From Haliotis rubra (lineage: Eukaryota), in NCBI RefSeq assembly GCF_003918875.1, contig NW_025765054.1, forward strand, positions 62,001-126,000: a stretch of 64,000 nucleotides of DNA, written 5' to 3'. The notes under the pieces are model-generated. The model had not been told where the DNA came from. It ran no database searches and saw only the letters and a program-made list of their open reading frames with translations. Positions 421 to 61,248 of the stretch are shown in pieces. The stretch's first letter is position 1. The number at the start of each line of letters is the position of its first letter. Made by a program: the position numbers and the translations under genes.

Positions 421-660
421 ATCTTGGAAGAGACGGTCGTTAAGATCTCCATTAATCCAGCGCCCACTGTCAGTCCGAATGCTTCGACATCTTGGGATAA
501 GGGGCTCTTCATCCAGACCATTATGCTTGTTCCATCTGTTACTGTCGTAGCGAGCACTACGTCCCTGCGCCAGCCACTCGGGGTAGATCGTCACAGTTGT
601 GTTGCTCGAAACACTGCCAGTTGGTAGACTCAGTGTGAAAAGAAACAGTGTCCACTTCAT
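421..660 (-). CDS. GH86-like paralog copy 0, first coding exon only (signal peptide + N-terminus); rest of the gene lies before the window start
   Basis: ATG at 660, MKWTLFLFTLSL...RWNKHNGL...RTDSGRW...RLFQD, then donor GTGAGA at 420. Same 240-nt phase-0 exon as the other copies; CAG acceptor 3 nt upstream of the ATG. Confidence 0.85.
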
Positions 661-2780: not shown

Positions 2781-5530
2781 TCATTTTATGTCGGATGGGA
2801 CAAGTCTGGCAGCGACAAGAGCTACCGAAGTCACATAACCGTTCTCCTGGTTGGAGAAGTTAACCTGGACCTGGATAGAAGTAGAGTTCAACAAGTTAGG
2901 AGGATTCTCAAACTCCCAAACGTCCATGTTTGTATACATGTCACTGTTGTGTCTATCTGAGTCATACAGCTTGAAGAAGGAGTCAAGAGTTTGGTTGTTG
3001 AGGGTGACAGATTTCACATCGTTGGTTTCAGTAGTGAGCCAACTGGTTGAAACTCGCAGATTCGCGCTTTGGATTTCGCCAACCGGAAGTGATATGGTTG
3101 TAACAGCGATGTTGTCCTTGATAGGTATAATAACATCTGTTCCGTAATATGTCGTTTCATTGAGAGTGACTTTAGGTTGTTGGTCTGACGGGATCTTGAA
3201 TGTAAAGCGACATGTTGCTTCAGGAGGAAGTTCAACCATTCCTTGAGTTTTCCCGATGTCAATGGGTTCGTTGAAGGTCATGACCGGGTACCAGTTGTCC
3301 TTGATGGTGATACAAGTAGCTTCGCCCGTGGTCGGTGTGATCCAGTCGTCTTGGAAAATTAGCTTAACGGTTTGTGACTCTTGTGAATAGCTGTGAAGGA
3401 GAATGACGGTTTCATTCTTCAAAGGACTGGCCATTGCTAGCGGTGACACAGTTCGTTCTTGTCCGTCCGATTGGCTGGAGGTTCTGATGAAGGAGTACTC
3501 TGACGTAAAATTGTACCAAAACTTGAAAACGTCGACCAAACGTGTGGCATTCCCTTGCTGGGTGAAAAGTGAAAAGTTGAGACTGTCATGTCCTGACGTT
3601 GCTCGTTAGATAAACAAAACACCACTGTTCTATCAATGTATTCTCTGAGACCAAGTTGGGTGAATCGGTGGCCATTGATGCAATATATTGTTGAAAAATC
3701 GACTATACCCGATGGAGCATCTTTGCTAATACCTTCTACTTTCCCGCGACCATATTCACTGATAATGATGGGAATAGATTTTCCTTTCTTTCGATGGACA
3801 TAGCTTTCAAGGAGGTCGACAAATGCTACCAAACGGGCTTCATTATTTCCAGTGAATTTGTGAGTTTTCCCCGAAACAACTAGTGAGTTGTATGAATGAA
3901 AGGAAAATACATCTAACTCATCTAATGCGATGTCTAGAAACTGTACCAGTTTTGGCCAGAAGGAGAAGTTATTTCTGTCTACGTCTGTATTATACCCTGT
4001 CATTGTTGGACCCGCCACTTTGATGTTAAATCTGGAATGGAGTTTCTCAGCAACTGCTTTATGATAGACGCTAACAGTGGTGCTGAAATTCATGATGTCC
4101 CCTTTAACATCTGGTTCATTGACGACTTCAAAGTAGGGCGGTATCTGACCTTGTGTGTAGTCATAAACTCCTTGCACCATTAACATTATGAACTCTGCAG
4201 CAGCATCGACGTTGTTTGGGAAATGACCTTGATGTTCTGGCTGGTTCATCCAGTTGGGCCAATTAAGAGCTGAAAAATATGAATGAACAACACATGGATA
4301 CATACTGTTGCAGTGACGTTCTTCTTTTCATCGAAATGTACTCGAATTATAATAACGGATATGGATGCCTCCCGGACACTTATATTTATATCACATGTGC
4401 AGGAGTTTTTGGTGGAGTCCGGAAAATTTTCAAATATAAGAAAGCTGTTGGGTATTAGTAAATGATAAACATGTGTACTATTTATATTTCTGTGGCAGTT
4501 TTGTACAATGATCAAATTTGCAATTCATCGGTCCGTTTCTGACTCAAACGGACTGTATGTACCACCAGTACATTTCTTATCTTTGAGTGGCATTTTAGAA
4601 GTTGGGAAGTACTTTCCATAAAGTTTGTTCTATATAGTACATTTCTTTTTTTCAGGATGCACTTACATGTGGACACCATGATCATTTCGTTCTTGTACCC
4701 ACTGTTAATGTTGGCAAGATACGTGGAGAACAGTTCCTGTTGCTTGGTGACGTTCTTCAGGTAGTTCGGGTCTGGGTAGCCACTACGGTTAGGGTCCTGT
4801 GGCCACTACAAAATAAACGATTTCCATGGATGATTGTCACTGTCGATTTGCTAAAATTACATGTGTGGAAATACTAATGTAGATATTTCTAATCGTGTTT
4901 ATACGAAAAGAATGATTATACCATAGATACTTATTCACAAACAACATACACGTACAGATTCTAATAAATCTGAGCAATGTATTTCAAACACCACTGAATA
5001 TTCCTGCCAAATAACCAACCCAAACATGACCAACATCCATCCTTCAGTTAAATGTCTATCCAAGTAACAATGGATCAATGACTCCAATTAATAATATATA
5101 GATCGAAACAATATATCAATGCGATATGGTTTTACAGGGATAAATGGAAATTCAATGAAAAGAACATAATGTTATGCATGTAAAGTCAAAACAATATGTA
5201 ATGGTTATATTGTTATAATACAGCAAATCTGATTCAACATCTCGTTCTGCAAATGTTGCATACAGGCATACATAGGAACAAAAGTCTCACATCTAGAAAG
5301 AGATTATCATGTATATCTCTATTCATCCAGCGTCCGCTGTCAGTCCGAATACTGCGACAACATGGTATCAGGTATTCATGTTCCAGACCATTGTGCTTGC
5401 TCCATCTGTCAGGTTCATAGCGAACATTACCTCCCTTTGCCAGCCACTGAGGATAGATTGTCACAGTCGTGTTACTGTATACATTGGTTATCGATAGACT
5501 CAAAATGAAAACAACTGGCGTCCATCCCAT
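2781..5530 (-). pseudogene. GH86-like beta-porphyranase/agarase paralog copy 1, frameshifted
   Basis: Exons 5530-5291, 4805-4667, 4269-2781 with GT-AG ends. A 1-nt deletion near 3593 (cgt cag gac vs cgt caa gga c in copy 2) splits exon 3 into ORFs 3437-4303 and 2781-3539. Could be an assembly indel. Confidence 0.8.
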
Positions 5531-6680: not shown

Positions 6681-7054
6681 ACCAAACAAACTACAAGTAC
6701 ACCGATAGATTACGAAGACTATATTGACGGAGATTACACATATGTCTTTAAAGATGGATTTGGCGATGATGGGATCGACTCATTACTTGAAATAGGTGTT
6801 AATACATGCAAACAGCATAGAAACAGAGAAACAAATATTCAGTCGAACAAGATCAAAACATCGTCTGCTTTCAGAATAAAAATGCAGCAAGAAACATTTG
6901 TTTACGTTGATTCAGTGGTATGTCAAAACAGATTAAGGAGCTGACTGTTACATAATTGCATTTTTTAATTTATTATCAGCTTTCGTTGACGATATCGCCA
7001 CAAATTTTGATCCGGCAACTGAGGATACATTAACATGGAACACCGAAGAAACGC

Positions 7055-12405: not shown

Positions 12406-14943
12406 TCATATCATTATGTCGGATGGGACAAGTCTGGCAGTAACAAGAGCTACCGAAGTCACATAACCGTTCTCCTGGTTGGAGAAGTTAACCTGGACCT
12501 GGATAGCAGTAGAGTTCAACAAGTTAGGAGGGACCTCAAACTCCCAAACGTCCATGTTGGTATACATGTCACTGTTGTGTCTATCTGAGTCATACAGCTT
12601 GAAGAAGGAGTCAAGAGTTTGGCCGTTGAGGGTAACAGATTTCACATCGTTGGTTTCAGTAGTGAGCCAACTGGTTGAAACTCGCAGATTCGCGCTTTGG
12701 AATTCGCCAACCGGAAGTGATATGGTTGTTACAGCGATGCTGTCCTTGATAGGTATAATAACATCTGTTCCGTAATATGTCGTTTCATTGAGAGTAACTT
12801 TAGGTTGTTGGTCTGATGGGATCTTGAATGTAAAGCGACATGTTGCTTCAGGAGGAAGTTCAACCATTCCTTGAGTTTTCCCGATGTCAAAGGGTTCGTT
12901 GAAGGTCATGACCGGGTACCAGTTGTCCTTGATGGTGATACAAGTAGCTTCGCCCATGGTCGGTGTGATCCAGTCGTCTTGGAAAATTAGCTTAACGGTT
13001 TGTGACTGTTGTGAATAGTTGTGAAGGAGAATGACGGTTTCATTCTTCAAAGGACTGGCCATTGCCAGCGGTGACACAGTTCGTTCCTGTCCGTCCGATT
13101 GGCTGGAGGTTCTGATGAAGGAGTACTCTGACGTGAAATCGTTCCAAAACTTGAAAACGTCGACCAAACGTGTGGCATTTCCTTGCTGGGTGAAAAGTGA
13201 CCAGTTGAGACTGTCATGTCCTTGACGTTGCTCGTTGGCTAACAAAAACACCACTGTTCTATCAATGTATTCTCTGAGACCAAGTTGGGTGAATCGGTGG
13301 CCATTGATGCAATATATTGTTGAAAAATCGACTATACCCGATGGAGCATCTTTGCTAATACCTTTTACTCCCCCGCGACCATATTCACTGATAATGATGG
13401 GAATAGATCTTCCCTTCTTTCGATGGACATAGCTTTCAAGGAGGTCGACAAATGCTACCAAACGGGCTTCATTATTTCCAGTGAATTTATGGGTTTTCCC
13501 CGAAACAACTAGAGAGTTGTATGAATGAAAGGAAAATACGTCTAATTGATCTAATGCGATGTCCAGAAACTGTACCAGTTTTGGCCAGAAGGAGAAGTTA
13601 TTTCTGTCTACGTCTGTATTATATCCTGTCATTGTTGGACCCGCCACTTTGATGTTAAATCTGGAATGGAGTTTCTCAGCAACTGCTTTATGGTAGATGC
13701 TGACAGTGGTGCTGAAGTTCATGATGTCCCCTTTAACATCTGGTTCATTGACGACTTCAAAGTAGGGCGGTATCTGACCTTGGGTGTAGTCATAAACTCC
13801 TTGCACCATTAACATAATGAACTCTGCAGCAGCATCTATGGTGTTTGGGAAATGACCTTGATGTTCTGACTGGTTCATCCAGTTGGGCCAGTTAAGAGCT
13901 GAAACATATGAATGAACAACACATTGATGCATACTGTTGGTGGGATGTTCTCCTTTTCATCGAAATGTACTCAGACATTTAATTACGGATATGGATACCT
14001 CCCAGACACTTACATTTATATCACATATAAGTACTGGTAAAGTTCTTGTTTTCAGGATGCATTTACATCTTGTCACCATGATCATTTCGTTCTTGTAACC
14101 ACTGTTAATGTTGGCAAGATAGGTGGAGAACAGTTCCTGTTGCTTGGTGACGTTCTTCAGGTAGTTCGGGTCTGGGTAGCCACTACGACTAGGGTCCTGT
14201 GGCCACTACAAAATAAACAATTTCGATGGATGATCGTCACTGACGATTAGATGAAAATAAGTTTGGCAATACTTATATAAATACATCTAATCGTGTTTAA
14301 ACAAAAAGAATGATTATACCAATGATACTTATTCACAAACAATATACACGTACAGATTGTAAAAAATCTTAGTAATTTAATTCAATCTAACTCAGTTCAA
14401 ACACTACTAGATATTCCTGCCACATAACCAACCTTATCCTTACCAGCGGTCATCCTTCAGTTAATGTCTATCCAAGCAAAAATGGATCAATGACTTCCAT
14501 TAATGATATATAGATCGAAACAATATATCAATTCGATAGGGCTTTACAGGGATAAATGGAAATCCAATTAAAAGTACATAGTGTTATGTATGTAAAGTGA
14601 ATACAATATGCAATGGTTATATTGTCATAATACAGCAAATCTGATTCAACATCTCGTTCTACAAATGTTGCATACACACATACATAGGAAAAAAAAGTCT
14701 CACATCTTGAAAGAGATTATCATTTAAATCTCTGTTCATCCAGCGTCCGCTGTCAGTCCGAATACTACGACAACTTGGTATCAGGTATTCATGTTCCAGA
14801 CCATTGTGCTTGCTCCATCTGTCAGGTTCATAGCGAACATTACCTCCCTTTGCCAGCCACTGAGGATAGATTGTCACAGTCGTGTTACTGTATACATTGC
14901 TTATTGATAGACTCAAAATGAAAACAACTGGCGTCCATTCCAT
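12406..14943 (-). CDS. GH86-like beta-porphyranase/beta-agarase paralog copy 2, intact, 623 aa, secreted
   Basis: Exons 14943-14704, 14205-14067, 13898-12406 (1872 nt, phases 0 and 1, GT-AG). Signal peptide MEWTPVVFILSLSISNVYS; acid/base NEP (E 13746-13744); nucleophile ISEYG (E 13386-13384). Confidence 0.9.
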
Positions 14944-15594
14944 TTTCCCTGATTTGTAGCATTTCCCAACAAAGGTCATAACTAGTTCAGTTGCAAGCGA
15001 CAGTGTCTTATAGCTCAGACGTTTGCCGCTGATAAGGTATCGCTGACCTTAATACACATACACCACACTGTTAGAACGTGATCAGTTACGCAGGGTCAAC
15101 TGTTATTTAGGTCTATCGGAAGGGTTGGCTATTCCATATCTGATTATACATGAATATGCATTGCATGGTTTACGGTTAAGCACTATTTTCGTCTGCCCAC
15201 CAACATGTCCCTCACCAAACAACCTACAAGTACATGGATAGATTACGGCGGTTATACTGACGGAAGTTACACGTATGTCTTTAAAGATTGATTTAGCGAT
15301 GATGGGTTCTACTCATTACTTGCGTAAAAAACAGAAATAGGTCTCAATACATGCAAACATACTTCACAAGCATAGAAACCAATATTCAGGCGAACAAGAT
15401 CAAAATATCCTCTGCTTTCCGAATAAAATTCAGCAAGAAAAATATGTCTACGTTGATTCAATGTTTTGTCAAAGCAGATTAAGGAGCTGACCGTTACATA
15501 ATTTAAATATATTATCAGCTTTCGTTGACGATATTATATCGCCACGAATCTTGATCCGAACATCGAACACCGAAGAAAAGCCTTCTGTCCACAG

Positions 15595-20751: not shown

Positions 20752-23586
20752 TCATATCATTATGTCGGATGGGACAAGTCTGGCAGCGACAAGAGCTACC
20801 GAAGTCACATAACCGTTCTCCTGGTCGGAGAAGTTAACCTGGACCTGGATAGAAGTAGAGTTCAACAAGGTGGGAGGGACCTCAAATTCCCAAACATCCA
20901 TGTTGGTATACATGTCACTGTTGTGTCTGTCTGAGTCATACAGCTTGAAGAAGGAGTCAAGAGTTTGGTTGTCGAGGGTTACAGATTTCACATCGTTGGT
21001 TTCAGTAGTGAGCCAACTGGTTGAAACTCGCAGATTTGCGCTTTGGATTTCGCCAACCGGAAGTGATATGGTTGTTACAGCGATGCTGTCCTTGATAGGT
21101 ATAATAACATCTGTTCCGTAATATGTCGTTTCATTGAGAGTAACTTTAGGTTGTTGGTCTGATGGGATCTTGAATGTAAAGCGACATGTTGCTTCAGGAG
21201 GAAGTTCAACCATTCCTTGAGTTTTCCCGATGTCAAAGGGTTCGTTGAAGGTCATGACCGGGTACCAGTTGTCCTTGATGGTGATACAAGTAGCTTCGCC
21301 CATGGTCGGTGTGATCCAGTCGTCTTGGAAAATTAGCTTAACGGTTTGTGACTGTTGTGAATAGCTGTGAAGGAGAATGACGGTTTCATTCTTCAAAGGA
21401 CTGGCCATTGCTAGCGGTGACACAGTTCGTTCCTGTCTGTCCGATTGGCTGGAAGTTCTGATGAAAGAGTACTCTGACGTGAAATTGTTCCAAAACTTGA
21501 AAACGTCGACCAAACGTGTGGCGTTCTTGCTGAGTGAAAAGTGACCAGTTGAGACTGTCATGTCCTGGAAGTTGCTCGTTGGCTAACAAAAACACCACTG
21601 TTCTATCAATGTATTCTCTGAGATCAAGTTGGGTGAATCGGTGGCCATTGATGCAATATATTGTTGAAAAATCGACTATACCCGATGGAGCATCTTTGCT
21701 AATACCTTTTACTCCCCCCGCGACCATATTCACTGATAATGATGGGAATAGATTTTCCCTTCTTTCGATGGACATAGCTTTCAAGGAGGTCGACAAATGC
21801 TACCAAACGGGCTTCATTATTTCCAGTGAATTTGTGAGTTTTCCCCGAAACCACTACCGAGTTGTATGAATGAAAGGAAAATACGTCTAACTGATCTAAT
21901 GCGATGTCCAGAAACTGTACCAGTTTTGGCCAGAAGGAGAAGTTATTTCTGTCTACGTCTGTATTATATCCTGTCATTGTTGGACCCGCCACTTTGATGT
22001 TAAATCTGGAATGGAGTTTCTCAGCAACTGCTTTATGGTAGATGCCGACAGTGGTGCTGAAATTCAAAACCTGATTCTCAGCCTCTGGTTCATTGATGAC
22101 CTCAAAGTAGGGCGGTATCTGACCTTGTGTGTAGTCATAAACTCCTTGCACCATTAACATAATGAACTCTGCAGCAGCATCGACGTTGTTTGGGAAAAGA
22201 CCTTGATGTTCTGACTGATTTATCCAGTTTGGCCAGCTACGAGCTGGAAGATATGAATGAACAACACATGAATGCATACTGTTGCAGTGATGTTCTCCTT
22301 TTCATAGAAATATGCCAATCCATTTAAATTAGATCGTTTTATTTCAAGACACTTGTCTCTTTTGTTGAATGTAAGAATTTAGACAAATGTTCACTAGAAC
22401 CATTCTCAAACTTGTTTACAGAATTCTGTGAAGCTAAACTTACTTTACAGTCGCAATAAATGCACCATAGATATTAACATACATAAATTTTACATTTGAT
22501 TGTGAAATAACATCGAGTTCGAAATGTTGTTTCCATGTACATCTTTGAATGGAAGCATATTGTAATTGCATAACTTTAACAGAAAGAGAAAACCCCGGCG
22601 TCTAAGTTTCTAGAATTTGTATTGCAGAAATGCGTTGCTCAGGGTTATGTGGGTCTAATTCCCACATTCGCTCGTAGAATGTTCTTTCTTTTGTCAGTTC
22701 AATACACATATTCGTATTTGTAAACACCAAGCATCAGTCAATAGGCTACGCCATATATATTACATATAAGTTCTGCTAATGACTTGTTTTCAGGGTGCAC
22801 TTACATTTTGTCTCCATGATCATTTCGTTCTTGTAACCACTTTTAATGTTTGCAACATACGAGGAGAATAGTTCCTGCTGCCTGGTGACATTCTTCAGCT
22901 AGTTCGGGTCTGGGTAGCCACTACGGTTAGGGTCCTGTGGCCACTACAACATAAACAATTTCCAGTTAGTGTTTATATAGATGATTACGTGTCACTAACA
23001 ATTAGGTAAAATTTTATTATTGGTAATACTAGTATAAATAATAAATTAACCGTTTTTAAACAAAATTGTCTGAATGACAAAAGATTCTCATTATGTTACT
23101 TATTCACAAACAATCTAGTTTAATTCAAACAACACTACACTACCTAATAACCAGCCCTGATATGATCAGTGACTATCCCACAGTTGATGACTATTCAAGT
23201 AACAAAGAAACGATGCATTTCATTGCCAATATCTAGATCTAAACGGGCAATGGTCATGTTTTGTTCTGGTTAGATACAGCAAATCTGATTCAACATCTCG
23301 TTCTGCGAATGTTGCATACACGCATACATAGGAACAAAAGTCTCACATCTTGAAAGAGATTATCATTTAAATCTCTGTTCAACCAGCGTCCGCTGTCAGT
23401 CCGAATACTACGACAACTTGGTATCAGGGATTCATGTTCCAGACCATTGTGCTTGCTCCATCTGTCAGGTTCATAGCGAAGATTACCTCCCTTTGCCAGC
23501 CACTGAGGATAGATTGTCACAGTCGTGTTACTGTATACATTGATGATTGAAAGGCTCAAAATGAAAACAACTGGCGTCCATTCCAT
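20752..23586 (-). pseudogene. GH86-like paralog copy 3, pseudogene
   Basis: Exons 23586-23347, 22943-22805, 22243-20752. In-frame TAG in exon 2 (22901-22899; TAC in copies 1, 2, 4, 5), +1 in a G run near 21715, 2-nt deletion near 21525. Confidence 0.85.
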
Positions 23587-31661: not shown

Positions 31662-34600
31662 TCATTTATTGTCAGATTGGACAAGTTTGGCAGTGACAAG
31701 GGCTACGGAAGTCACATGTCCGTTCCCGTCCTTGTTGGAGAAGTTAACTTGGACCGTGATAGAAGTGGAGTTCAGCAAGGTGGAAGCGACAACACACTCC
31801 CATACATCCATGTAGTTGAAGATTTTACTGTTATTTTTATCTGAGTCAAACAGCTTGTAAAAGAAGTTAATAGGTTCGTTGTTGAAGATAACAGATGACA
31901 GACTGTTTGTTTGATTCATTGGAAGACTTGTCGAGATTCGCAGTCTTGCGCTATAGAATTGCTCTTTTGGCAGTGGTACGGTTGTCATAGCGGTGCCGTT
32001 CGTGATGGGAATTATAATATCACTGCCGTAGTACGTAGTTTCATTGAATGTGACTTTAGGTAATTGATCTGAGGTCGTCTTAAATGTATAGCGACAGGTC
32101 GCTTCAGGTAGCAGTTTAACAGTTCCCCCAGTGTTACTGATGTCAAACGGTTCATTCAAAGTGATGACTGGATACCAGTCGTCCTTGATGGTGATGCAGG
32201 TAGCTTCGCCAGTGGTTGGTGTTATCCAATCGTCTTGAAAAATTAGCTTGACTGTCTGTGATTGTGTGGAATAGCTGTGTAAAAGAACGACGGTTTCGTT
32301 ACGCGAGGAACTTGACAGTACTAATGGTGACACAGTTCGTTCCTGTCCGTCACACTGGCTGGCAGTTCTGATGAAGGAATACTCTGACGTGAAGTTGTAC
32401 CAAAATGTGAAGACATCGGCAATCCGTGCGGCCTTTCCTTGGCGGGTGAAAAGTGACCAGTTAAACCCATCAGATCCGCGGTGTTGTTTAGAGGGTAAAA
32501 GAAACACCACCGTTCTGTCAATGTATTCTCTGAGACCAAGTTGGGTGAATCTGTGCGCATTTGCTTGGTATATTGTTGAAAAGTCTACAATGCCAGATGG
32601 AGCACTTTTGCTAATTCCTGATACTCCCCCGCGACCATATTCACTGATAATAAGAGGCATAATCCTTCCCGTCTTTTGATGGATATAGTTTTCAATCAGG
32701 TCGACAAATGCTACCAGACGTGCTTCATTTATGCCAGTAAACTGGTGGGACTTGCCCGTAACATTAAGGGAGTTGTAAGAATGAAACGAAAACACGTCTA
32801 AACGGTCTAGAGTGATGTCCATGAATGCTACCAGTTTTGTCCAGAACGAAAAGTCTTTCCTATCGACCACTGTATTATATCCTGTAATTGTCGGACCAAC
32901 AACTTTGATGTTAAACCTGGAATGGAGTTTATCGGCAACTGATTTGTGGAAGTTGGCGACAGTGTTGGTGAAATTCATGATGTCCCCTTTAACATCTGGT
33001 TCATTGACGACCTCGAAGTATGGCGGTATCTGACCGTTTGTGTAGTCATACACTCCTTGCACCATCAATGTTATAAACTCTGAAGCAGCATCGATGCTGT
33101 TGGGGAATTGACCCTTATGGTCGGACTGGTTCATCCAGGTCGGCCAGTTATGAGCTAAAATCAAAAAACAAAATGGAGCATGAGTGAGTGAGTGAGTTAA
33201 GATTTTAAGTCACATCGGCAATATAGAGGTATAGATTTATAATGATTAAAAATTAAATTATAAACACCTGTCAACAAGGACAATTAAACTACTAGATTAT
33301 CACGGATATATATTTAAAACTAGTAATTAAATCTAAAATTGTTTAATTATAGAGGACGATACAATATAAAAACGGACTATAGATCGCCAACAACTGAAGG
33401 TAGATCACCATACTAGGGACCATGGGGACTTACAGTACCTTTGCTACCTGCGTGGACCCTAGTTGGATTTACATCATCTCTTCAGCCGCTGGCGATTGTA
33501 AGAATGTCAGCCAAAATTCAAATAACAAGAATACTACGTTTAAAAAACCTGGTAAGTTTAAATTGACTTAGAATTGTTTTGGGACTTATACGTACCAAAA
33601 TGGAGCATGAACTATATATACCTTCCTATTAGAATGTACACATGTTTTTCAATTTTGGAGACAAGACTTCTCTTTGTCTTGAAGAAGATACAGGATGGTT
33701 ATCTTTTGTGGGAATATATTTAATTGCTTCTATTCACTTCAGTTGCCATCAAAGCAGCCTCAAGGGAATCAGTCTGCATAAACATGACACCAACAGGTAC
33801 GATACGAGTACACCTCAGCCAGTTTTCGACTACAGATTGCCAAAGGATCAGGATCGAAATTTAAAATCATTACATGTTATATTTCATTAACACGTCACCT
33901 CACATACGTCACCTCTTCACACAGCTGCAATACTGATGAGTGCAGCAACACAATATTACGGTTGCTTGTCTATCCAACGCCTTACCTCTTTGATTCAAAG
34001 AGGGTAGCCTAGTGGTTTAAGCGTTCGCTCGTCACCCCGAAGGCCCGTGTTCGATTCCCCACATGGGTACAATGTGTGAAGCCCAAATTCAGGTGTCCCC
34101 CGTCGTGATATTGCTGGAATATTGCTAAAAGCGGCTTAAAACTCTTCCAATTTGTTAAAACTTGTTTTCATATTATTATTGTGGAAGACATAGAAATATT
34201 AATTCCCTGAGTCATGTTAACAATCTAGTGGTAGCTCTAGTTTCTGAAATCTCTTACCTCTCGCCATCATGATCATATCATTCTCATAACCATGGTTAAT
34301 GTTAGCCAGGTACATAGAAAACATTTCCTGTTGCCTGCTGACGTTCTTCAGGTAGTTGGGATCTGGGTAGCCGCTGTGGTGTGCGTCCTCTGGCCACTAA
34401 AATAGACTTTCACACATGTACACATCTTGCAACCACTGTTAACTTTAGCAAGCTGTTGAATCCTGTTATTGTAGCCGCTATGGTGTACGTCGTCTTGACA
34501 CCAGAATCATTTAGCTATTTGCATAGTATCAGTTTATTGCTTCTTTGACAGATTTTGTCAGTGCGAAAATATGCAGCCACAATACCGTCCAGCTGTGGCT

Positions 34601-35488
34601 GTGTCCATTGTGACGGACAATTTTATTTTTGATATACATGTTGTAATTGATCACTTATTTACGACATTGTATGGTGTATAACAGGAAAAGTTCCATTAAA
34701 TAGTGGTTCACTTGTCCATGTTTAAACGTAAGAGGCGACTAACGGGATCGGGTGGTCAGGCTCGCTGACTTGGTTGACACATGTCATCGGTTTCCAACTG
34801 CGCAGATCGATGCTCATGCTGTTGATCACTGACTTGTCTGGTCCAGACTCGATTATTTACAGACCGCCGCCAGATAGCTGGAATTTGGCTGAGTGAGGCG
34901 TTAAACTAAAGTCACTCACTCCATGTTTAAACTATTCACAAAAAAGTATACATGGTGGCCTTCTCCATATCAGACTGGAGTAATTTCTGTGCACGTGTCT
35001 GTAGTTACACGACCAAGGGCCATCCAGTAATATGTGTCCGTTAAGTAAAGTATTAGATTGTGCCAATAACCGTAGCTTGGACATCATACTTTGACGTCAT
35101 AATCTTCTTAAAGCTATAACTAGACACTAATGTCTGTTACAATCAAGTTTCTTACACTTTTTAGAACAAATACATATAAATTACAAAGACCAAAAACACC
35201 CCACAACAACAAAGAAAAAAGAGAATACAACTGAATAGAAAATCTCACGTTTGGGAAGAGTCGATTGCCATAATCTGGGTGTATCCAACGCCCGCTGTCA
35301 GTCCCAAGGCTCCGACAGTTTGGAATAAGGGATTCCCGTTCCAGGCCATTATGCTTGTTCCACCTGTTACTCTCGTAACGAACACTACTTCCCTGTGCCA
35401 GCCACTGAGGGTAGATCGTTACAGTTGTGTCACTGTAAACACTGTATATTGTCAGGCACAGGGTGAGAAAGACCAGTGTTAAGTTCAT
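31662..35488 (-). CDS. GH86-like paralog copy 4, intact, 623 aa, secreted
   Basis: Exons 35488-35249, 34396-34258, 33154-31662 (1872 nt, GT-AG). Signal peptide MNLTLVFLTLCLTIYSVYS; VVNEP, FSFHSY and ISEYG intact. Confidence 0.9.
33182..33590 (-). mobile_element. I-clade/Nimb-like LINE 3' UTR fragment in intron 2 of copy 4
   Basis: gagtgagtgagt tail and tatagatcgccaacaactgaaggtagatcaccatactaggg core. Confidence 0.75.
34001..34143 (+). mobile_element. tRNA-derived SINE
   Basis: A box tagcctagtggt, B box gtgttcgattcccc, tail gctggaatattgctaaaagcggc; other copies 50110-50277 (+) and 47511-47632 (-). Confidence 0.8.
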
Positions 35489-37764: not shown

Positions 37765-40700
37765 TCAGGACTCGAGCTTGCCTGTGACAAGAGCAACTGA
37801 AGAAACATATCCTGTTGTCATGTTGTTTAGGAAGTTGACCTGTACCTGGTTAGCCCCAGTGACAAACATGGAGGTAGGGACTGCAAACTCCCAAACCTCC
37901 CAAAAGGTGGTGCAATTAAACTTGTCAGAATCATACAGTTTGTAAAACGAGTTCAGGCGGTGGTTGTTAAAGGTAAGATACGATACGCTGTTTGTAACAT
38001 TGGTTGGCCAGCTGGTTGAAACTCTCATTCTTGCACTGTAATACTGGCCTTTCGGTAGTTTTATTTCTGTCAAAGCCAAGTTGCCCTTTACTGGTATAAG
38101 TGTATCGGCGCCGTAGAATGTGGTTTCGTTGAGTGTGACTCTAGGTAGCTGGTTTGAGGTGGTCTTGAATGTAAAGTGACATGTTGCCTCAGGGGGAAGT
38201 TCGAGAATTCCCTTTGTCTTCTGGATGTCGAAGGGTGTATTGAAGGTCATGATCGGATACCAGTTGTCTTTGATGGTGATACAAGTAGCTTGTCCAGTAG
38301 TTGCTTTCATCCAGTCGTCTTGAAATACTAACTGGACATTTTGTGTTTTCTGAGAATAGCTATGCAAGAGAACGACAGTTTCATTATGCAAGCAACTGGA
38401 CATTACTAATGGTGACACTGCTCGTTCCTCTCCGTCATATTGGCTGGTAGTTCTGATAAAGGAGTAGTCTGGAGTGAATTTGTACCAAAACTTGTAGACG
38501 TCAGCAATACGTGTAGCGTTTCCTTGTTGGGTGAAAAGTGACCAGTTGAGACTATCATGTTCACTGGCTAAAAGAAACACCACTGTTCTGTCAATGTATT
38601 CCCTGAGACTTAGTTGGGTAAATCTGTGGGCATTGCAGTGGTATATTGTTGAAAAGTCTACTATACCCGATGGAGCAAATTTGTCAATTCCCAGCACAAT
38701 ATCGCGACCATACTCGGTGATAACAAGGGGGACCTGCTTCCCTGTTCTACGAGAGGCATAACCTTCCACAAGGTCGACAAATGCTACCAGACGTGCTTCA
38801 TTCATTCCAGTAAGATTGTGAGATTTCCCCGACACGATCAGTGAGTTGTACGAATGGAAGGAAAATTCATCCAGATAGCCTTGTGTGTGGTCCATGAAAT
38901 AGGCCACGTTTTTCCAATACGAAAAGTCGTTTCTATCTGCCAACCCAGTTTCTCCGTCAAGTGTAGGACCATTTACCTTGATGTTAAATCGAGCATGGAG
39001 TTTCTCAGCAACTAACTTGTGGAAGATGGCAACAGTAGTAAAATTCCAGATGTAAAACTTAGCGTCCGGTTCATTTATTGGCTCAAAGTAGGGTGGGATC
39101 TCTCCATTGGTGTAGTCATATACTCCTTGCACCATCAACATTATGAACTCTGAAGCAGCATCAATGTTGTTAGGGAACTGACCATCATGTTCTGACTGAT
39201 TTATCCAACTAGGCCAGTTATGAGCTAAAATCAACAAAATACGGAACATGAAATTAACATAAAAACATATTTCTGCTTTCAATATAATATGCACATTCCT
39301 GTTTGATATAATTTCATCCTACGAAAATTCATTTTCTCCATTACTGAGTGCCTTGTTTGGAAACCTGCATGATTGCTTAAGTTGGTTTTAACAACATTTT
39401 AACAGTATTCCTGTTCTTCATGGCGTGTCAGATTCATATCAGAGGAGATTCTGCATATGGCATGCACTATGTTGGTCAAATCCATAAGCACGATGTGTTG
39501 CTGATGAAAAAGGAATCGTAGTCAGGGCGAACATCGATTCGAACCAACGATGATGGGTTTCTGGCATGCCCACGGGACACTGCTCTGAAGAACCACGATT
39601 TGGCCAACCATAGATGATAACTGAATTGCTTTTAAACACTTACACGTAGCTTTAGGAAAGGATATCATTTTCATCTCACCAGGATACATGAAATTGATTC
39701 TCATGATTTGACATTCATACATTGGTATTGTTTAAGAGCCAGTGTTATACGGTTAGCAGCAATGTTTCACTCGTCATACATTGTACCTTTAGAGTCATTG
39801 AGGGGCGTGGTGATTACACCGAGGGAACTCTCCTATACAAATTCAAATATGGATTACTGTTACCGAGAGGTGGATATTACCACAATTGTCTTCATTGTCA
39901 CAACAACTGCTCTTGTATTATACCGTACTTATATTAAGTATGTACTTACACACCATTTTGTACTGCCATTGTGATACCTTTGCACTGATTTGTGAACATA
40001 GTTGATTTTAGAATACAGTTGAAAACTGTTGTGTCGCATCCCATCGTTGCAGGTTGTTGAGAAAGTCAAGGGTTAACAAAATATCCCAAGGTTGACCTCA
40101 CAACTGTACTTTTCGCGGTATTTTAATGGAGCGACATTGTCCGTGTACATCTCAAGGGCCCGCTAGGTGGCGCCCCTGCCACTGTCATTGAGTAAGTTCC
40201 CCTTTGCATTGATTTGTGAAAGAAGTTGATTTGAGAATACAATTGTTAATTGCATCATTTGTTTGTTGTTTGTTGGTTTAATACGTAGTTCTCCCACCGT
40301 CTGATTAACGGTAAATGTTCAGTGTCAACATGGGAATCAACATTAACAACATATATTATTATCCGTCTCGACAGTTGAGTACAATGCACCATACATGTCT
40401 GCAAACGTTTCATTTGAGACAGAGATGACTATGAATGCAGCTCTTCTAAGTTAAGTATGTTCATTGAATGTTTCTATGAAAACATGCTCACCTCTCGCCA
40501 TCATGACCATTTCGTTCGTAAAACCGCTTTCGATGTTAGAAAGATAGGCGGAGAAATATTGCTGCTGTTTGGTGAAGTTCTTCAAGTAGTTGGGTTCAGG
40601 GTAACCACTACGGTTTGGGTCCTCTGGCCACTGTACGAATTGTAAATTAAGGTACCATGATAATAAAATGTCTACGTGAAGTCATGTAACTTTGTGAATA

Positions 40701-41012
40701 ATTATTTCTTTGCTGTTCTGGACAATACGTGAGAGCTTCTTTCCCTTCAGTAAGTGAAAACATGAAAATTCACCAAACAAGAAACTAATTAATATTAATA
40801 AAGGTTGATGTGTTAATGCTCTCACAACTGCAATTACAAGACACTGATTTGCATTGATCTTTTCTAAATATCATAGTTATATTGAGGATATTAATTCAGC
40901 ATTTGGCCATGACCACTCTACCATGAGAGTGTATCCGTATGGGCGTAATTGTGTGCGTGTATGCCTGTGTGTGTGCGTGTATGTCCATGTTTTTGTTCTA
41001 CTTCTTACCCGT

Positions 41013-41052
<40 letters not shown>

Positions 41053-42587
41053 GAGACACACATTTATCTGTGTGCTTGTATGTGTATGTCTTTGTTTTGT
41101 GACACATGTTTTGTGACACACGTACATACATACAAGTTAACTTCCCATTCGTCTGTATTGTTGCTAGGCAAAGACTACCGACGTCACCTTTCCAAACCAT
41201 CTTGACGGGGGAGAGTGAGTGAGTGATTTGAGTTTTACGCCGCACTCAGCAATATTCCAGCTATATGGCGGCGGTCTGTAAATAATCGAGTCTGGACCAG
41301 ACAAGCCAGTGATCAACAGCATGAGCATCGATCTGCGCAATTGGGATACGATGACATGTGTCAACCAAGTTAGCGAGCCTGACCACCCGATCCCGTTAGT
41401 CGCCTCTTACGACAAGCATGGGTTACTCAAGGTCGATATTCTAACCCGGACCTTTAGGGGTAATCTTGACGGGGGAGAATATACGGGAATAAGTTGGAGT
41501 AGAAAACAGGTATGTGTTGCTATTATTTTAGCATTAGCATTGAGACGAGACTCAAATCTGATTTGTAATTTACATGTAGACAATATTTCAAATGGTTTCA
41601 CAACGCCCACCAAGGTTGAAATCTCCTTCTGGGGAATACATTCATATCAATCTGGATTAGAGCTGGCTATGAGGTGAAACCTGCTATGAGGTGAAACAAA
41701 GGCTGAAACACGGGGCAATGTATGGAAACTGGAAGTTCACAGATAAAAGTTGCAGAGTTTAACATTGGCCTGACTTCGTACAAATGCGAGGTACGTGTTA
41801 CGAAAGCCTGGTGCTGCCACGTATGTAGCATTAAGTGCTTTTAATTGAAATGTATTGTTGTTTCAAGTTTTCTTCACTCTGCTTGAATTATTCTTTTTTT
41901 CCGCTATTTTCTCTGTTCACTTCAATTAGTGTCATGTTACTTCACGGTTCTTTTTTCAAGAATTTGAAATTTCGATTATTTTTACGTTATTTAAGTTTTT
42001 TCTTGCTGCTACGATTATTTTCTCGCTGGGTCGATTATATTCTCATTTCTCATTCGATTAATATTTCGAAGATTTTTATATTATATCAAGTTTCTTTCAC
42101 AAACTCGAACTTTTATATTTTTGAAAGTTGAAACAGTGAGAAAATAACTAAAGCAAACGGAAAATACTCGAAATTTCAAGTTTGTGAAAGGAACGAGTAA
42201 ATAATCATGTTTTACAAAAGATTTAATGTATCTCGAATTTATTTATCAATTTGTAAATCTGTTATTAGAAACTAATATATGTTACAAGTTTGAAACAGTA
42301 TACATGAGCTGGAAAGGAAAAAAATCAAATTAAATAGAAAATCTCACATCTTGGAAGAGTCGGTTACTATAATCTTCATGTATCCAGCGTCCACTGTCAG
42401 TCCCAAGGCTCCGACAGTCGGCCATTAGGGACTCCGGTTCAAGACCATTGTGCTTGTTCCACCTGTCAGTCTCATAGACAACACTACGTCCCTGTGCCAG
42501 CCACTGGGGATAAATCGTTAAAGTTGCGTCACTGTTTACACAATCTATTGCCAGGAACACGGCGAAAAAGACCAGTGTCAATTTCAT
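37765..42587 (-). CDS. GH86-like paralog copy 5, intact, 612 aa, secreted
   Basis: Exons 42587-42348, 40630-40492, 39224-37765 (1839 nt). Signal peptide MKLTLVFFAVFLAIDCVNS; PINEP, FSFHSY and ITEYG; 4-aa in-frame loop deletion (LLASEHDS). Confidence 0.9.
39430..40030. repeat. ~600-bp unclassified repeat, second copy at ~43050-43650
   Basis: Shared gctgatgaaaaaggaatcgtagtcagg...cacgggacactgctctga...gtacctttagagtcattgagggc...ccattttgtactgccattgtgatac. Confidence 0.8.
41014..41046. repeat. (CA)n microsatellite
   Basis: Perfect CA run; another at ~45144-45181. Confidence 0.95.
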
Positions 42588-45410: not shown

Positions 45411-48400
45411 TCAATCTGATTGGATAAGCTTGCCTGTGACAAGAGCAACTGAAGAAACATATCCCGTAGTCATGCTGCTTGAGAAGTGGATCTGTACCTG
45501 GTTAGTCCCCGTTACAAACATGTAGGGAGGAACTACGAACTCCCAAACCTCCCAGTAAGTGGTACGGGCAAACTTGTCGGAGTCATACAGCTTGTGGAAA
45601 GCATCAAGGCGATGGCGGTTAAAGGAAAGGTATGATACACTGTTAGTTTCACTGATTAGCCAACTGGTTGAAACTCTCAGCCTGGCACTCTGATATTGTC
45701 CATTTGGTAGAGATATTACTGTCGAGACTACATTGCCGTTGATTGGTATGAGTGTGTCAGATCCGTAGTATGTGGTTTCGTTCAGTGTGGCACTAGGTAG
45801 CTGGTCTGATGGTGTCTTGAATGTAAAGTGACATGTTGCTTCTGGAGGCATATTTACAATTCCTTGGGTCTTCTGGATGTCGAACGACTCATTGAAGGTG
45901 ATGACTGGATACCAGTTATCCTTGATGGTGATACAAGTAGCTTCCCCCGAGGTTGGTTTGATCCAGTTATTTTCAAAGTCTAGTTTGACAGCCTGCGACT
46001 TCTGAGAATAGCTGTGCAAGAGAATGACTGTTTCGTTATCCAGTGGGCTAGACATTGCTAAGGGAGACACGGTTCGCTCCGCTCCATCATACTGGCTGGT
46101 AGTTCTGATAAAGGAGTATCCCGACATGAATTTGTACCAAAACTTGAAGACGTCGACTATGCGAGTGGCGTTTCCTTGAAGTGTGAAAAGTGACCAATTG
46201 AGACTATCATGTCCTGGGTATTTTTCGTTGGCTAAAAGAAACACCACTGCCCTGTCGATGTATTCCCTAAGACCCAGCTGAGTAAATCTGTGGGCATTTG
46301 CTTGGTATATCGTTGAAAAGTCAACTATTCCTGATGGGGCATATTTGTCAATTCCTGTCACAGGTCCGCGGCCATATTCACTGATAACAAGGGGGATAAT
46401 CTTTCCGGTTTTCTTAGAGGCATAGCTTTCAACAAGGTCGACGAATGCAACCAAGCGTGCCTCATTCATACCAGTAAGATTGTGAGATTTTCCAGAAACA
46501 ACGAGTGAATTGTACGAATGAAACGAAAAGACATCTATATATCCTAAAGTGACGTCCATGAAATCTGCCACTCTTTGCCAGTATGAAAAGTTGTATCTGT
46601 CCGACAATCCAGTTTCTCCATCGAGTGTTGGACCAGACACTTTGATGTTAAATCTGGAATGGAGTTTCTCAGCAACTGATTTATGAAACTTGGCAACGGT
46701 GGTGAAATTCAATATACGCCCTTTACCATCCGGTTCATTTATTGACTCAAAGTAGTGTGGTATTTGTCCCTTTGTGTAGTCATAAACTCCCTGCACCATC
46801 AACATCATGAACTCTGCAGCAGCATCGACATCGTTCGGAAACTGACCTATATGTTCAGACGTGTTTATCCAACTCGGCCAATAAAGACCTGTAAAATATT
46901 ATAATTTTTGTATGAATTTGGCAATGGCTGAAATAAAACGGTTTGACAAGGTCTGGAATAGAAGAATGTTACTGTCAAAGAATTAATGACGCGGAATATA
47001 TCAGTCAGAGAAAGAAAAAATAATGCTGATGAAGAAAACGACCCTTTCAAACATTGACGTGGCTTTTTTGTCGATCGTTCCGGTAAGATTACATTATATT
47101 TTTTGTGTGGTGTTTAAAGAAAGAACATTCCAGTATTCATTATAATTTGTTGTTTTAATGTAGGTTATCACATTTAGTATTTCTATGAAAGCATTTTACA
47201 ATAATTATTTTGTTTCAAGAATGAACGATAATAACAGCACCAAATGTTTTTAGGTCAGTGAATAAAAATTCAACAAAAACATTAACTATATTTAGGTAAG
47301 TTTCTTTTTAAAATCAACTTTGAGTCACATTGTCGACTGCCTTTTGGTGGAACACTAACGTGATAGGGAGACACGATACATCTGCTTTCTTGACTCATCC
47401 TCATCAAGGATGGGTTTCAATCCTTATAGGGTGGTAAGTGTTATATATGTGACAGGCAAAGATAGTTATTTTGATTAATTGCTTATTGTCTGGCAAATAA
47501 GGTCCCTTATGAGTGAGTGAGTGAGTTGGGCTTTACGCCGCTTTTACCAATATTCCAGCAATAACACGCATTGTGCCCATGTGGGGAATCGAACCCGTGT
47601 TTTCTGCATAAAAAGCGAACGCTTTACCCGCTATGAGTAGGAACAGTTTTTGATGAACTCTACACATCATAACAACTTGCTCAGTAATCGGTGGCCTATA
47701 GTTTCCCCAAAATGTAGGTAAGTGTAAGGGACACGTGAAAGCACTTCTCAACTCTGAATATTTTAAAAATGATGTAAAGAGATTGTATCCTTGCGTATTT
47801 CCGTATCGTTCACATTTGATTTCGGGAAATTTATGGAATATGTTTGTTGTTTATAGCAACCTTCAGCAATATCTAAGCTCCATAACGATGGTCAGCAAAT
47901 AATAGGGTTTTGTTCAGAATAACTAGTGGTTGTAATTATGAGAAATGGCCAGCGTGAAAAACTGATTCGCATCATACGATATAGACCGCCTTGTGGAACA
48001 ACAGGCAAACATAGCAAAATCTCTAAAACGCAAGTTCAGGTTCACATTAAGATATTTTGACTTTACCACAACGTTGGTTATTACTGATGGTTTTATACAT
48101 GATTGGGACGATGACCAACAGTGGGCTGTGTTCTCCCAGAGTGCTCTAATGGGGAAGACCCGTGAAAATCCGGGCTAGAAATCATCTTCAGTAACCCATG
48201 GTTGTCGTAAGAGGCGACAACGGCATCGGGTGGTCAGGCTCGCTGGCTTGGTTGACACATGTCATCGTATCCCAATTACGTAGGTTGATGCACATGCTGT
48301 TGATCACTGGATTGTCTGGTCCAGACTCTATTATTTACAGACCGCCGTCACATAGATGAGTGCGGTGTAAAACTAAACTCACTCACTTACTCTAATGGGG

Positions 48401-60300: not shown

Positions 60301-61248
60301 GATCCTGCTTCGTTCCGCCCCGTCTACAATGTCATCATATCGATCATTCTTACCTCCCGCCATCATGATCATGTCGTTCTCGTAACCACTTTTAATGTTC
60401 TCAACGTACTTGGAGAACATTTGGTGTTGCATGGTGACGTTCTTCAGGTGGTTGGGGTCAGGGTAGCCACTACGGTTTGGGTCCTCTGGCCACTGCAATC
60501 AATATACGTATTGCATTAGTAGAATTATGTTATACCTTGTGCCATTCGTCAAAGCCTTTTAGCACAGATATGTACTCTCTCACACACTGTTTTGCCAGGA
60601 ACTGATGTATTTACTCATATTGTGAACTTAAGAGAATACACCACTAGGACACTGGGAACTATTAACCAAAATTTCAAAATAATGGTGTTTTCAAATTAAA
60701 TTTGTGCTTTCCTTCTTAGGAGGATATAAAATACTTATAAAAATGTTTATAACCTAGATACTTTTCCGGTTTGACTAAAGTACTTAGCACAGTACTTGAT
60801 TTTACTCTTGTTGATGACCGTTTCAGTTCAATCTGAAGAGATGGTGCTAATCATATTTGTGTAATGGCTGCGTTAAATGAATATATATATATATATAATA
60901 ACTTCATCATGATATCATTGTCAAATACAGTTCTGAAAAATACTGGGGCCAGGTTTTATTACGAAGTCCATGTTAGTATCGTTCATTGGTTGTTCTCACG
61001 TCTTGGAAGAGACGATCGTTAAGATCTCTGTTATTCCAGCGCCCAGCGTCAGTCCCAATGCTCCGACATTTGGGGATGAGAGATGCCCGATCAAGACTAT
61101 TGTGCTTGTTCCATCTATTGCTGTCATAGCGAGCGCTTCCTCCCTGTGCCAGCCATTGAGGGTGGATCGTCACAGTTGTGTCACTGTATAGGCCACGGAC
61201 ACCGCCAACTGTCAGACTCAGAATGAAAAAGACCTGTGTCCATTTCAT
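57398..61248 (-). pseudogene. GH86-like paralog copy 7 with a single nonsense mutation
   Basis: Exons 61248-61000, 60492-60354, 58866-57398. TGG>TAG at 58558-58556 (NFSY*QNV vs NFSYWQRV in copy 6); frame otherwise open. Confidence 0.85.
59160..59813. repeat. AT-rich minisatellite (~28-bp unit tattgtattgtaacatattgtatttatg) split by a SINE-like copy at 59351-59595
   Basis: Direct tandem units on both sides of the insertion, in intron 2 of copy 7. Confidence 0.85.

What the first reader, a model, noticed from the sequence alone, without database searches (positions are those of the whole stretch)
12406..14943. Signs of domestication: two N-terminal introns, one ~1.5-kb uninterrupted catalytic exon and many N-glycosylation sequons
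Seen: in every complete copy the only coding introns fall after codon 80 (83 in copy 7; phase 0) and ~46 codons later (phase 1). The whole catalytic and C-terminal region is one exon. Proteins carry many N-x-S/T sequons (NTT, NVT, NFS, NAT, NET, NST) and conserved cysteines (CRS; two ATC motifs). Inference: a bacterial intronless ORF gained introns before the array expanded and adapted to the eukaryotic secretory pathway. The introns also exclude bacterial contamination.
Basis: partly seen in the sequence, partly recalled or inferred. Interest (0 to 1): 0.7.

Follow-up and report, generated by a model that had tools for sequence, protein, structure and literature searches.

The report
Abalone GH86 seaweed-enzyme gene, ancient introns
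This is an intact abalone gene for a secreted enzyme resembling bacterial enzymes that cut red-seaweed agar and porphyran. Its two introns are shared with mussels and chitons, so the gene family entered molluscs before those groups split, not recently.

Summary
Window 12406-14943 (minus strand) is an intact three-exon gene: 80 codons, a phase-0 intron, 46 codons plus 1 nt, a phase-1 intron, then a 1493-nt exon to the stop. All seven full copies in the window share both intron sites. Three of them (c1, c3, c7) are disrupted as assembled.

The protein belongs to glycoside hydrolase family GH86 (beta-agarase/porphyranase type). Both catalytic Glu motifs are conserved.

- **Age of the introns.** They were not gained just before this array expanded. 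The same two introns, at the same sites and phases, occur in every abalone paralogue clade tested, in a mussel gene and in two chiton genes. They therefore predate the divergence of these three mollusc classes.
- **Sequons.** Enrichment (12-14 per protein against 6-8 expected) is real but confined to this abalone subclade. Mussel, chiton and other abalone clades are sequon-poor, so it is a late change.
- **Cysteines.** The two 'EATC' cysteines are a mollusc-wide novelty, absent from bacterial-type relatives.
- **Donor.** The mollusc clade is monophyletic (100/100). Its nearest relatives are an unidentified eukaryote transcript and marine metagenome ORFs, so the immediate donor is unresolved.

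No RNA reads were available to confirm the splice junctions.

The parts
14704..14943 (-). c2 exon 1: ATG, signal-peptide-like N-terminus (MEWTPVVFILSLSISNVYS), then the start of the mature protein (NTTVTIYPQWL...LFQD); 80 codons
   Evidence: profile positions 1-80; hydrophobic core, Kyte-Doolittle 2.9
14206..14703 (-). c2 intron 1, 498 nt, GT..AG, phase 0
   Evidence: same site and phase in mussel, chiton and other abalone clades
14067..14205 (-). c2 exon 2, 139 nt (WPQDPSRSGYPDPNYL...IMVTR + 1 nt)
   Evidence: profile positions 81-126
13899..14066 (-). c2 intron 2, 168 nt, GT..AG, phase 1
12406..13898 (-). c2 exon 3, 1493 nt including the stop. It encodes the rest of the TIM barrel, with the NEP acid/base and SEYG nucleophile motifs, and both beta-sandwich domains, with the two EATC cysteines.
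14977..14979 (-). Alternative in-frame start codon 12 codons upstream of the ATG at 14943; used by RefSeq models of the closest orthologues
421..660 (-). c0: exon 1 only; the rest of the copy lies beyond the window start
2781..5530 (-). c1: exons 5530-5291, 4805-4667 and 4269-2781. A 1-nt deletion near 3594 shifts the frame of exon 3.
20752..23586 (-). c3: exons 23586-23347, 22943-22805 and 22243-20752. In-frame stop in exon 2, 1-nt insertion near 21719 and 2-nt deletion near 21525.
31662..35488 (-). c4, intact: exons 35488-35249, 34396-34258 and 33154-31662
37765..42587 (-). c5, intact: exons 42587-42348, 40630-40492 and 39224-37765
45411..50867 (-). c6, intact: exons 50867-50628, 48573-48435 and 46888-45411
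57398..61248 (-). c7: exons 61248-61000 (83 codons), 60492-60354 and 58866-57398. TAG replaces a Trp codon near 58558.

Best explanation
The locus is an intact, selectively maintained gene for a secreted GH86-family glycoside hydrolase. It is one of eight tandem copies in an abalone chromosome region.

**Likely mechanism (inferred from family membership).** This is a retaining clan GH-A enzyme. The Glu of the NEP motif would act as acid/base and the Glu of the SEYG motif as nucleophile. It would cut beta-1,4 links in red-algal agar-type galactans (agarose, porphyran or funoran) in the gut lumen.

**History.**
1. A single GH86-type gene, ultimately of bacterial type, entered the mollusc stem lineage before chitons, gastropods and bivalves diverged.
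2. In that stem lineage the once-continuous ORF gained two introns in its first fifth (phase 0 and phase 1). It also gained a pair of cysteines in the first beta-sandwich domain.
3. The family then expanded independently in each lineage, reaching dozens of copies in abalone, by tandem birth and death. This window holds 4 intact copies, 3 disrupted copies and 1 partial copy.
4. Only later, within one abalone subclade (the one in this window), about nine conserved N-glycosylation sequons were added.

**Shown:** gene structure, family membership, conserved catalytic residues, shared introns across three mollusc classes, clade-specific sequons, purifying selection.

**Inferred:** secretion, glycosylation, the disulfide, the substrate, and the direction and source of the transfer.
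For: - **Structure.**
- **GH86 membership.** phmmer of exon 3 hits only GH86 structures. The profile of 19 abalone homologues hits the three solved GH86 enzymes at E 9e-34 to 7e-25 over about 530 positions. An AF2 model of the 90%-identical orthologue P0001 has as its best Foldseek matches BuGH86, Aga86A_Wa and BpGH86A (TM 0.64-0.70), clearly ahead of GH30/GH39 at TM below 0.58.
- **Catalytic residues.** The NEP Glu is invariant in all 63 mollusc, 3 sister-clade and 134 of 135 bacterial-type sequences. The SEYG Glu is invariant except in two abalone paralogues.
- **Shared introns.** Exact spliced mapping of RefSeq proteins on their loci gives the same two sites and phases in Mytilus trossulus, in Haliotis clades B, C, D and E and in two chiton genes. 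A chiton-like Logan contig has the acceptor at the same phase-1 site.
- **Exon 1 is not a captured host exon.** Its mature part aligns with the N-termini of P0077 (from profile position 22), P0089, P0113 and a Flavicella protein.
- **Phylogeny.** The mollusc clade gets 100/100, the sister clade 99/97, and the two together 100/100 against 13 bacterial-type sequences (91-row quick tree).
- **Score gap.** In a search of 1.84 billion representative proteins, mollusc-type full-length proteins score 484 bits or more and everything else 171 bits or less.
- **Selection.** dN/dS is 0.16-0.24 at dS 0.7-1.3 among the intact copies.
- **Sequons and cysteines.**
Against: - No transcript evidence for this species. 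The three runs that hold the stretch are DNA-like.
- No enzyme activity is known for any animal GH86, and none was found in the searchable literature.
- The tree is unrooted. 'Nested in bacteria' rests on treating bacterial-type sequences as the outgroup.
- The sister clade includes a eukaryotic transcript that shares the Cys pair, so a non-bacterial immediate source or an older eukaryotic history is possible.
- Absence from other molluscs and other animals was not tested genome by genome.
- The AF2 model is of moderate confidence (mean pLDDT 71) and is of an orthologue, not of the window's own joined protein.
Confidence: 0.7

Rival explanations
1. A bacterial ORF was acquired within the abalone lineage, gained its two introns shortly before this tandem array expanded, and picked up sequons and cysteines as it adapted to the secretory pathway.
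For: All copies in the window share the introns. Clade A proteins are sequon-rich.
Against: Identical intron sites and phases occur in mussel and chiton genes and in all abalone paralogue clades tested. Sequon enrichment is absent from those lineages. dS between copies in the array is already 0.7-1.3.
Confidence: 0.04
2. No direct bacterium-to-mollusc transfer. The family either came from a marine eukaryote (protist-to-animal transfer) or is an older eukaryotic or animal gene inherited vertically and lost in most lineages.
For: The sister clade contains a EukProt transcript (P0077). It shares the mollusc Cys pair and the 'TV.I.P..L' strand directly after a signal peptide. Close relatives of the sister clade are missing from 185,579 bacterial and archaeal species genomes, apart from one 25%-identical hit.
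Against: Among 1.84 billion representatives, every high-scoring protein whose source could be read was a mollusc (Haliotis, Mytilus), chiton-like, or, for one protein (P0072), lay on a retrotransposon-bearing contig of unnamed organism. Those of the remaining family members that carry a name are bacterial. The genes have only two introns, which is unusual for an old animal gene. The other sister-clade members are intronless ORFs on short metagenomic contigs of 55% GC.
Confidence: 0.18
3. The 5'-only intron pattern results from loss. An intron-rich ancestral gene lost its 3' introns through recombination with a partial cDNA, leaving only the two 5' introns.
For: A 5' bias of retained introns is the known signature of reverse-transcriptase-mediated intron loss (general knowledge). 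Both introns lie in the first 20% of the coding sequence.
Against: No homologue in any lineage keeps a further shared intron. The one extra intron, in H. cracherodii P0068 (phase 2 after codon 352), is lineage-specific. Non-mollusc relatives have no introns at all over the region.
Confidence: 0.06
4. Bacterial contamination or an assembly artefact.
For: The protein family is otherwise typical of marine bacteria.
Against: The genes have GT-AG introns with conserved phases. GC content is 37-41%, like the surrounding sequence. Transposase remnants lie inside and between copies. Homologous arrays sit on chromosome-scale scaffolds of four other Haliotis species. An independent DNA data set of a close relative covers exons and introns contiguously.
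Confidence: 0.01

Closest known systems
Bacterial GH86 beta-agarases and beta-porphyranases (BuGH86 of Bacteroides uniformis, PDB 5ta1/5ta0/5ta5; Aga86A_Wa, 8h97; BpGH86A of Bacteroides plebeius, 4aw7)
   Same: Same three-domain architecture: a (beta/alpha)8 barrel followed by two beta-sandwich domains. The alignment covers about 530 residues at E down to 9e-34. The NEP and SE[YF]G catalytic motifs align.
   Different: Only about 16% identity in the structural alignment. The mollusc genes are encoded in an animal genome, have two spliceosomal introns, carry no CBM6 or T9SS modules, have a mollusc-specific Cys pair and, in this subclade, about 12 N-glycosylation sequons. Substrate and activity are untested.
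RefSeq 'beta-porphyranase A-like', 'beta-agarase-like' and 'funoran endo-beta-hydrolase-like' models of Haliotis asinina, H. rufescens, H. cracherodii, H. rubra, Mytilus spp. and Liolophura sinensis
   Same: Same family and same exon structure. P0001 of H. asinina is 90% identical to c2 exon 3 and uses the same junctions.
   Different: These are automatic annotations. No paper in the searched library describes, dates or tests them.
Other polysaccharide-degrading enzymes encoded in animal genomes and thought to be horizontally acquired, such as GH45 cellulases of beetles and molluscs (PMC6509783, PMC11025796)
   Same: A microbial-type carbohydrate-active enzyme integrated in an animal genome. 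It has acquired introns and a signal peptide, expanded by tandem duplication, and is linked to a plant or algal diet.
   Different: A different enzyme family and a different presumed substrate (red-algal sulfated galactans). Here the shared introns date the acquisition to before the chiton/gastropod/bivalve divergence.

Membership tests
Glycoside hydrolase family 86 (CAZy GH86) | Significant sequence similarity of the catalytic module to characterised GH86 enzymes | tested here: met
   Exon 3 alone hits only GH86 chains in the PDB, at E 1.5e-9 to 3.5e-7. The abalone profile gives E 9e-34 to 7e-25 over profile positions 73-610.
Glycoside hydrolase family 86 (CAZy GH86) | (beta/alpha)8 barrel followed by two beta-sandwich domains | tested here: met
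   The AF2 model of orthologue P0001 (90% identical, pLDDT 71) has as its top seven Foldseek hits the chains of the three solved GH86 enzymes (TM 0.64-0.70). The next folds score TM below 0.58. This was tested on the orthologue, not on the joined window protein.
Glycoside hydrolase family 86 (CAZy GH86) | Clan GH-A catalytic pair: acid/base Glu in NEP and nucleophile Glu after strand 7 | tested here: met
   c2 has EVVNEPD and IISEYG. Both columns are conserved across mollusc, sister-clade and bacterial-type sequences. They align with EVINEP and ISEYG/ISEYS of 8h97 and 5ta1.
Glycoside hydrolase family 86 (CAZy GH86) | Endo-beta-agarase, porphyranase or funoranase activity | not testable with these tools
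   No biochemical data for any animal member were found.
Horizontally acquired animal gene | Animal sequences form one clade whose nearest relatives are non-animal | tested here: inconclusive
   Mollusc monophyly is 100/100 and the clade groups with non-mollusc sequences. However, the tree is rooted by assumption and the sister clade is of unknown, partly eukaryotic, origin.
Horizontally acquired animal gene | Physical integration in the host genome (introns, host-like composition, flanking host or transposon sequence) | tested here: met
Horizontally acquired animal gene | Patchy distribution among animals | tested here: inconclusive
   Only Haliotis, Mytilus, one unnamed contig that carries retrotransposon genes (P0072) and chiton sequences appeared among high scorers. 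Absence from other mollusc or animal genomes was not checked directly.
Spliceosomal introns | GT..AG borders with the reading frame restored, conserved in site and phase among diverged copies | tested here: met
   Seven copies in the window and seven genes of five other species.
Spliceosomal introns | Spliced reads across the junctions | tested here: inconclusive
   No RNA run was found. The runs laid on the stretch are DNA-like contigs that span the introns.
Secreted N-glycoprotein | Cleavable signal peptide and occupied sequons | not testable with these tools
   There is a hydrophobic N-terminal core in all copies and sequon excess in clade A. No signal-peptide predictor or glycoproteomic data were available.

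The most novel reading that the evidence does not exclude
A GH86 red-algal-galactan hydrolase gene was captured once by the mollusc stem lineage, before chitons, gastropods and bivalves diverged. It has since been kept and repeatedly amplified in algae-eating or algae-filtering lineages. Molluscs would then digest agar or porphyran with their own enzymes rather than relying on gut bacteria, making this one of the oldest datable carbohydrate-enzyme acquisitions in animals.
Probability: 0.45. Interest if true: 0.7.

Novelty: new member of a known kind. Interest (0 to 1): 0.55.

Why it matters
Agarase and porphyranase activity in seaweed-eating molluscs is usually credited to gut microbes. The review PMC2817930 says this explicitly, and PMC5870069 discusses GH86 only in abalone gut bacteria. 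Abalone digestive extract ('abalone acetone powder') has been used to digest the cell walls of the red alga Porphyra (PMC9962006).

A large, selectively maintained, intron-bearing GH86 family in the animal's own genome offers a host-encoded source for that activity. The shared introns give a rare internal clock. They show the family was already an animal gene before the chiton/gastropod/bivalve divergence, so it is an old part of molluscan digestive biology rather than a recent abalone novelty. The late, clade-specific gain of glycosylation sites and the existence of nucleophile-less paralogues point to ongoing functional diversification that could be tested directly.

Tried and rejected
- **RNA support for the junctions.** The look-up of sequencing runs returned only three runs of one study. 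Laid on the stretch, they are DNA-like contigs of a slightly diverged genome covering exons and introns, with no splice joints at the predicted sites.
- **Exon 1 as a captured host exon.** I suspected this because most bacterial alignments start at profile positions 78-82, exactly the exon 1/2 boundary. I rejected it because P0077, P0089, P0113 and a Flavicella protein align well into exon 1.
- **Origin of the sister clade.** The GTDB genome scan gave one distant Kiritimatiellales hit. Two JGI metagenome scans gave nothing. Pfam on the neighbouring ORFs was uninformative. The question stays unresolved.
- **Pfam and NCBIfam on the exon peptides.** Only sub-threshold hits (Cellulase GH5, Porphyrn_cat_1) and none in NCBIfam. 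The family was placed through PDB sequence and fold searches instead.
- **Literature.** Eight searches found no paper on animal GH86.
- **First spliced-mapping script.** It returned nothing because of a bug. It was rewritten and then gave exact models.
- **Three-way MAFFT of c1, c2 and c3.** It produced a spurious indel. Pairwise alignment replaced it.
Full report
**What is at 12406-14943.** On the minus strand there is a complete gene, here called c2.
- An ATG at 14943 opens an 80-codon exon ending ...NLFQD, followed by GTGAGA.
- After 498 nt, an acceptor ...TTTTGTAG precedes a 139-nt exon: WPQDPSRSGYPDPNYLKNVTKQQELFSTYLANINSGYKNEMIMVTR plus one base. This exon ends before GTAAAT.
- After 168 nt, an acceptor TGTTTCAG precedes a 1493-nt exon that runs to the stop at 12408-12406.

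An in-frame ATG 12 codons upstream (14979) is used by the RefSeq models of the closest orthologues. 'Codon 80' thus depends on the start chosen.

**The array.** tblastn with the three exon peptides finds seven full copies and one exon-1-only copy at the window edge, all on the minus strand.
- Every copy has GT..AG at both homologous sites with the same phases. Exon 1 has 83 codons in c7.
- Intron lengths range from 168 nt to about 2 kb.
- c2, c4, c5 and c6 are intact.
- c1 has a 1-nt deletion in exon 3.
- c3 has a stop in exon 2 plus two frameshifts.
- c7 has TAG in place of a Trp codon.
- The intact copies are old duplicates under purifying selection: dS 0.7-1.3 and dN/dS 0.16-0.24 on exon 3.
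- Transposase remnants lie in and between the copies.
- The 169-nt N run at 44583-44751 was left untouched.

**What the protein is.** Evidence for GH86 membership comes from sequence, profile and fold searches.
- Exon 3 alone matches only GH86 chains among solved structures: Aga86A_Wa, BpGH86A and BuGH86.
- A profile of 19 abalone homologues matches the same three enzymes at E 9e-34 to 7e-25 over about 530 positions. EVINEP and ISEYG align to the corresponding motifs.
- An AlphaFold model of the 90%-identical H. asinina orthologue P0001 (pLDDT 71) has the GH86 structures as its top Foldseek hits (TM 0.64-0.70), well ahead of GH30/GH39.
- The NEP Glu is invariant, and the SEYG Glu is invariant except in two abalone paralogues with Ala, P0069 and P0070.

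I conclude that c2 is a GH86 family member with an intact catalytic pair. Its substrate (agarose, porphyran or funoran type galactan) is inferred, not shown.

Searches were run exon by exon, and the full-length analyses used stored orthologues.

**Who else has it.** The word-based search found 66 relatives, all Haliotis, in several clades at 37-90% identity on different chromosomes.

The exhaustive profile search of 1.84 billion representative proteins shows a sharp gap. Mollusc-type full-length proteins score 484 bits or more, and everything else scores 171 bits or less. The high scorers also include Mytilus proteins, a protein on an ENA contig that carries retrotransposon genes, and a Logan contig. 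The Logan contig's protein is 72% identical to a protein of the chiton Liolophura sinensis, which has at least three paralogues.

Those lower scorers that carry a name are bacterial, for example Verrucomicrobia and Flavobacteriia.

**The introns are ancient.** I mapped RefSeq proteins exactly onto their own loci. The same structure appears in:
- Mytilus trossulus;
- Haliotis clades B, C, D and E;
- two chiton genes.

In each, a phase-0 intron lies directly before the [W/T/A/V]P[E/Q][D/N]P motif, after codon 75-82. A phase-1 intron follows 44-48 codons later, in the codon before xxWPxW. A single exon of about 1.46-1.5 kb then runs to the stop.

The chiton-like Logan contig has a polypyrimidine tract and AG at the same phase-1 site. 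One abalone paralogue, P0068, has an extra, unshared intron. So both introns predate the chiton/gastropod/bivalve divergence, and there is no trace of further ancestral introns.

**Gain in a continuous ORF, not exon capture.**
- Exon 1 corresponds to profile positions 1-80, exon 2 to 81-126 and exon 3 to 127-611.
- Most bacterial alignments begin at positions 78-82, which at first suggested a foreign exon 1.
- However, P0077, P0089, P0113 and a Flavicella protein align from positions 22-48.
- The non-mollusc ORFs are continuous across both intron sites.
- In the model, neither intron falls at a domain border.

**Origin.** In the careful ML tree the mollusc sequences form one clade (100/100). 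It contains four unresolved lineages: mussel, chiton, abalone C-F and abalone A+B.

The sister group (99/97) consists of a EukProt transcript (P0077), a Tara Oceans contig ORF (P0113) and P0226. These and the molluscs together separate from bacterial-type GH86 at 100/100 (a 91-row tree agrees).

I could not determine whether the sister clade is bacterial or eukaryotic. An ultimately bacterial origin is likely, because those of the remaining family members that carry a name are bacterial. The immediate donor is open.

**Sequons and cysteines.**
- *Sequon counts.* The intact copies carry 12-14 N-x-S/T sequons against 6-8 expected from shuffles (P about 0.01-0.03).
- *Clade A only.* Across 37 Haliotis clade A proteins the density is 1.8 per 100 aa against 1.0 expected, with nine positions conserved in at least half of them. 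Those positions are almost all absent elsewhere.
- *Other groups.* Haliotis clade B (0.49), Mytilus (0.32) and chiton (0.16) are below expectation and below bacterial-type relatives (0.76). Sequon gain is therefore a late, subclade-specific change.
- *The EATC cysteines.* The two 'EATC' cysteines are invariant in all 63 mollusc proteins, are shared by P0077, and are replaced by R/K/H/S and M/A/V/I in 135 bacterial-type sequences. Both lie on strands of the first beta-sandwich in the model. A disulfide is a reasonable inference but is untested.
- *The CRS cysteine.* The 'CRS' Cys is conserved only in abalone A/B and some mussel proteins.

**Transcript evidence and literature.** Transcript evidence is lacking. 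The three runs that hold the stretch are DNA-like.

Eight literature searches found no description of an animal GH86. The field's stated view is that mollusc agarases come from gut microbes (PMC2817930).

Earlier notes of this scan on other windows of the same genome reach compatible conclusions, and they mention nucleophile-less paralogues. I confirmed that last point for P0069 and P0070.

**Verdict.** The timing is wrong by a long way, the sequon argument applies to one subclade only, and the donor is not established.

Noticed in passing
window 2781-5530, 20752-23586, 57398-61248: Three of the seven full copies are disrupted as assembled. c1 has a 1-nt deletion near 3594. c3 has a stop in exon 2, a 1-nt insertion near 21719 and a 2-nt deletion near 21525. 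c7 has TAG in place of TGG near 58558. This suggests birth-and-death turnover in the array, or assembly errors.
   Followed up: partly
window 56578-57048 (+) and 49408-49893 (-): A DDE_3 transposase remnant (Pfam E 1.6e-10) lies between c6 and c7. A weak helix-turn-helix ORF lies inside intron 1 of c6. These stretches coincide with locally higher GC (0.45-0.46).
   Followed up: partly
window 660-690, 50867-50897, 61248-61278 (upstream of the ATG in c0, c6, c7): A 'ttacag' or 'cacag' acceptor-like motif sits 2-3 nt upstream of the ATG. This suggests a 5'UTR intron in these copies. c1-c3 instead have an in-frame upstream ATG.
   Followed up: no
window 15799-16058 and 59163-59822: A 134-bp tandem duplication (98% identical) lies upstream of c2. 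AT-rich 23-78-bp tandem repeats lie inside intron 2 of c7.
   Followed up: no
L008 (H. cracherodii, P0068) 6006-7445: This paralogue has a third intron (phase 2 after codon 352, about 1.4 kb) not shared with any other gene examined. It is either a lineage-specific gain or a gene-model workaround for an insertion.
   Followed up: no
P0069 (H. rubra) and P0070 (H. asinina): These paralogues have Ala in place of the nucleophile Glu (SAHG/SAYG). P0069 keeps the NEP motif, while P0070 has NEV there, still with the Glu. They may be non-catalytic, sugar-binding family members.
   Followed up: partly
L001 1-1306 (Mytilus trossulus); P0075, P0074: The mussel GH86-like gene lies next to a carbohydrate sulfotransferase gene. 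Some Mytilus gene models fuse GH86 fragments to CHST1-like or DDE transposase sequences.
   Followed up: no
P0113 residues 810-875 (L003): The Tara metagenome sister-clade ORF ends with a fragment resembling a GH3 N-terminal domain (Pfam E 1.2e-5).
   Followed up: no
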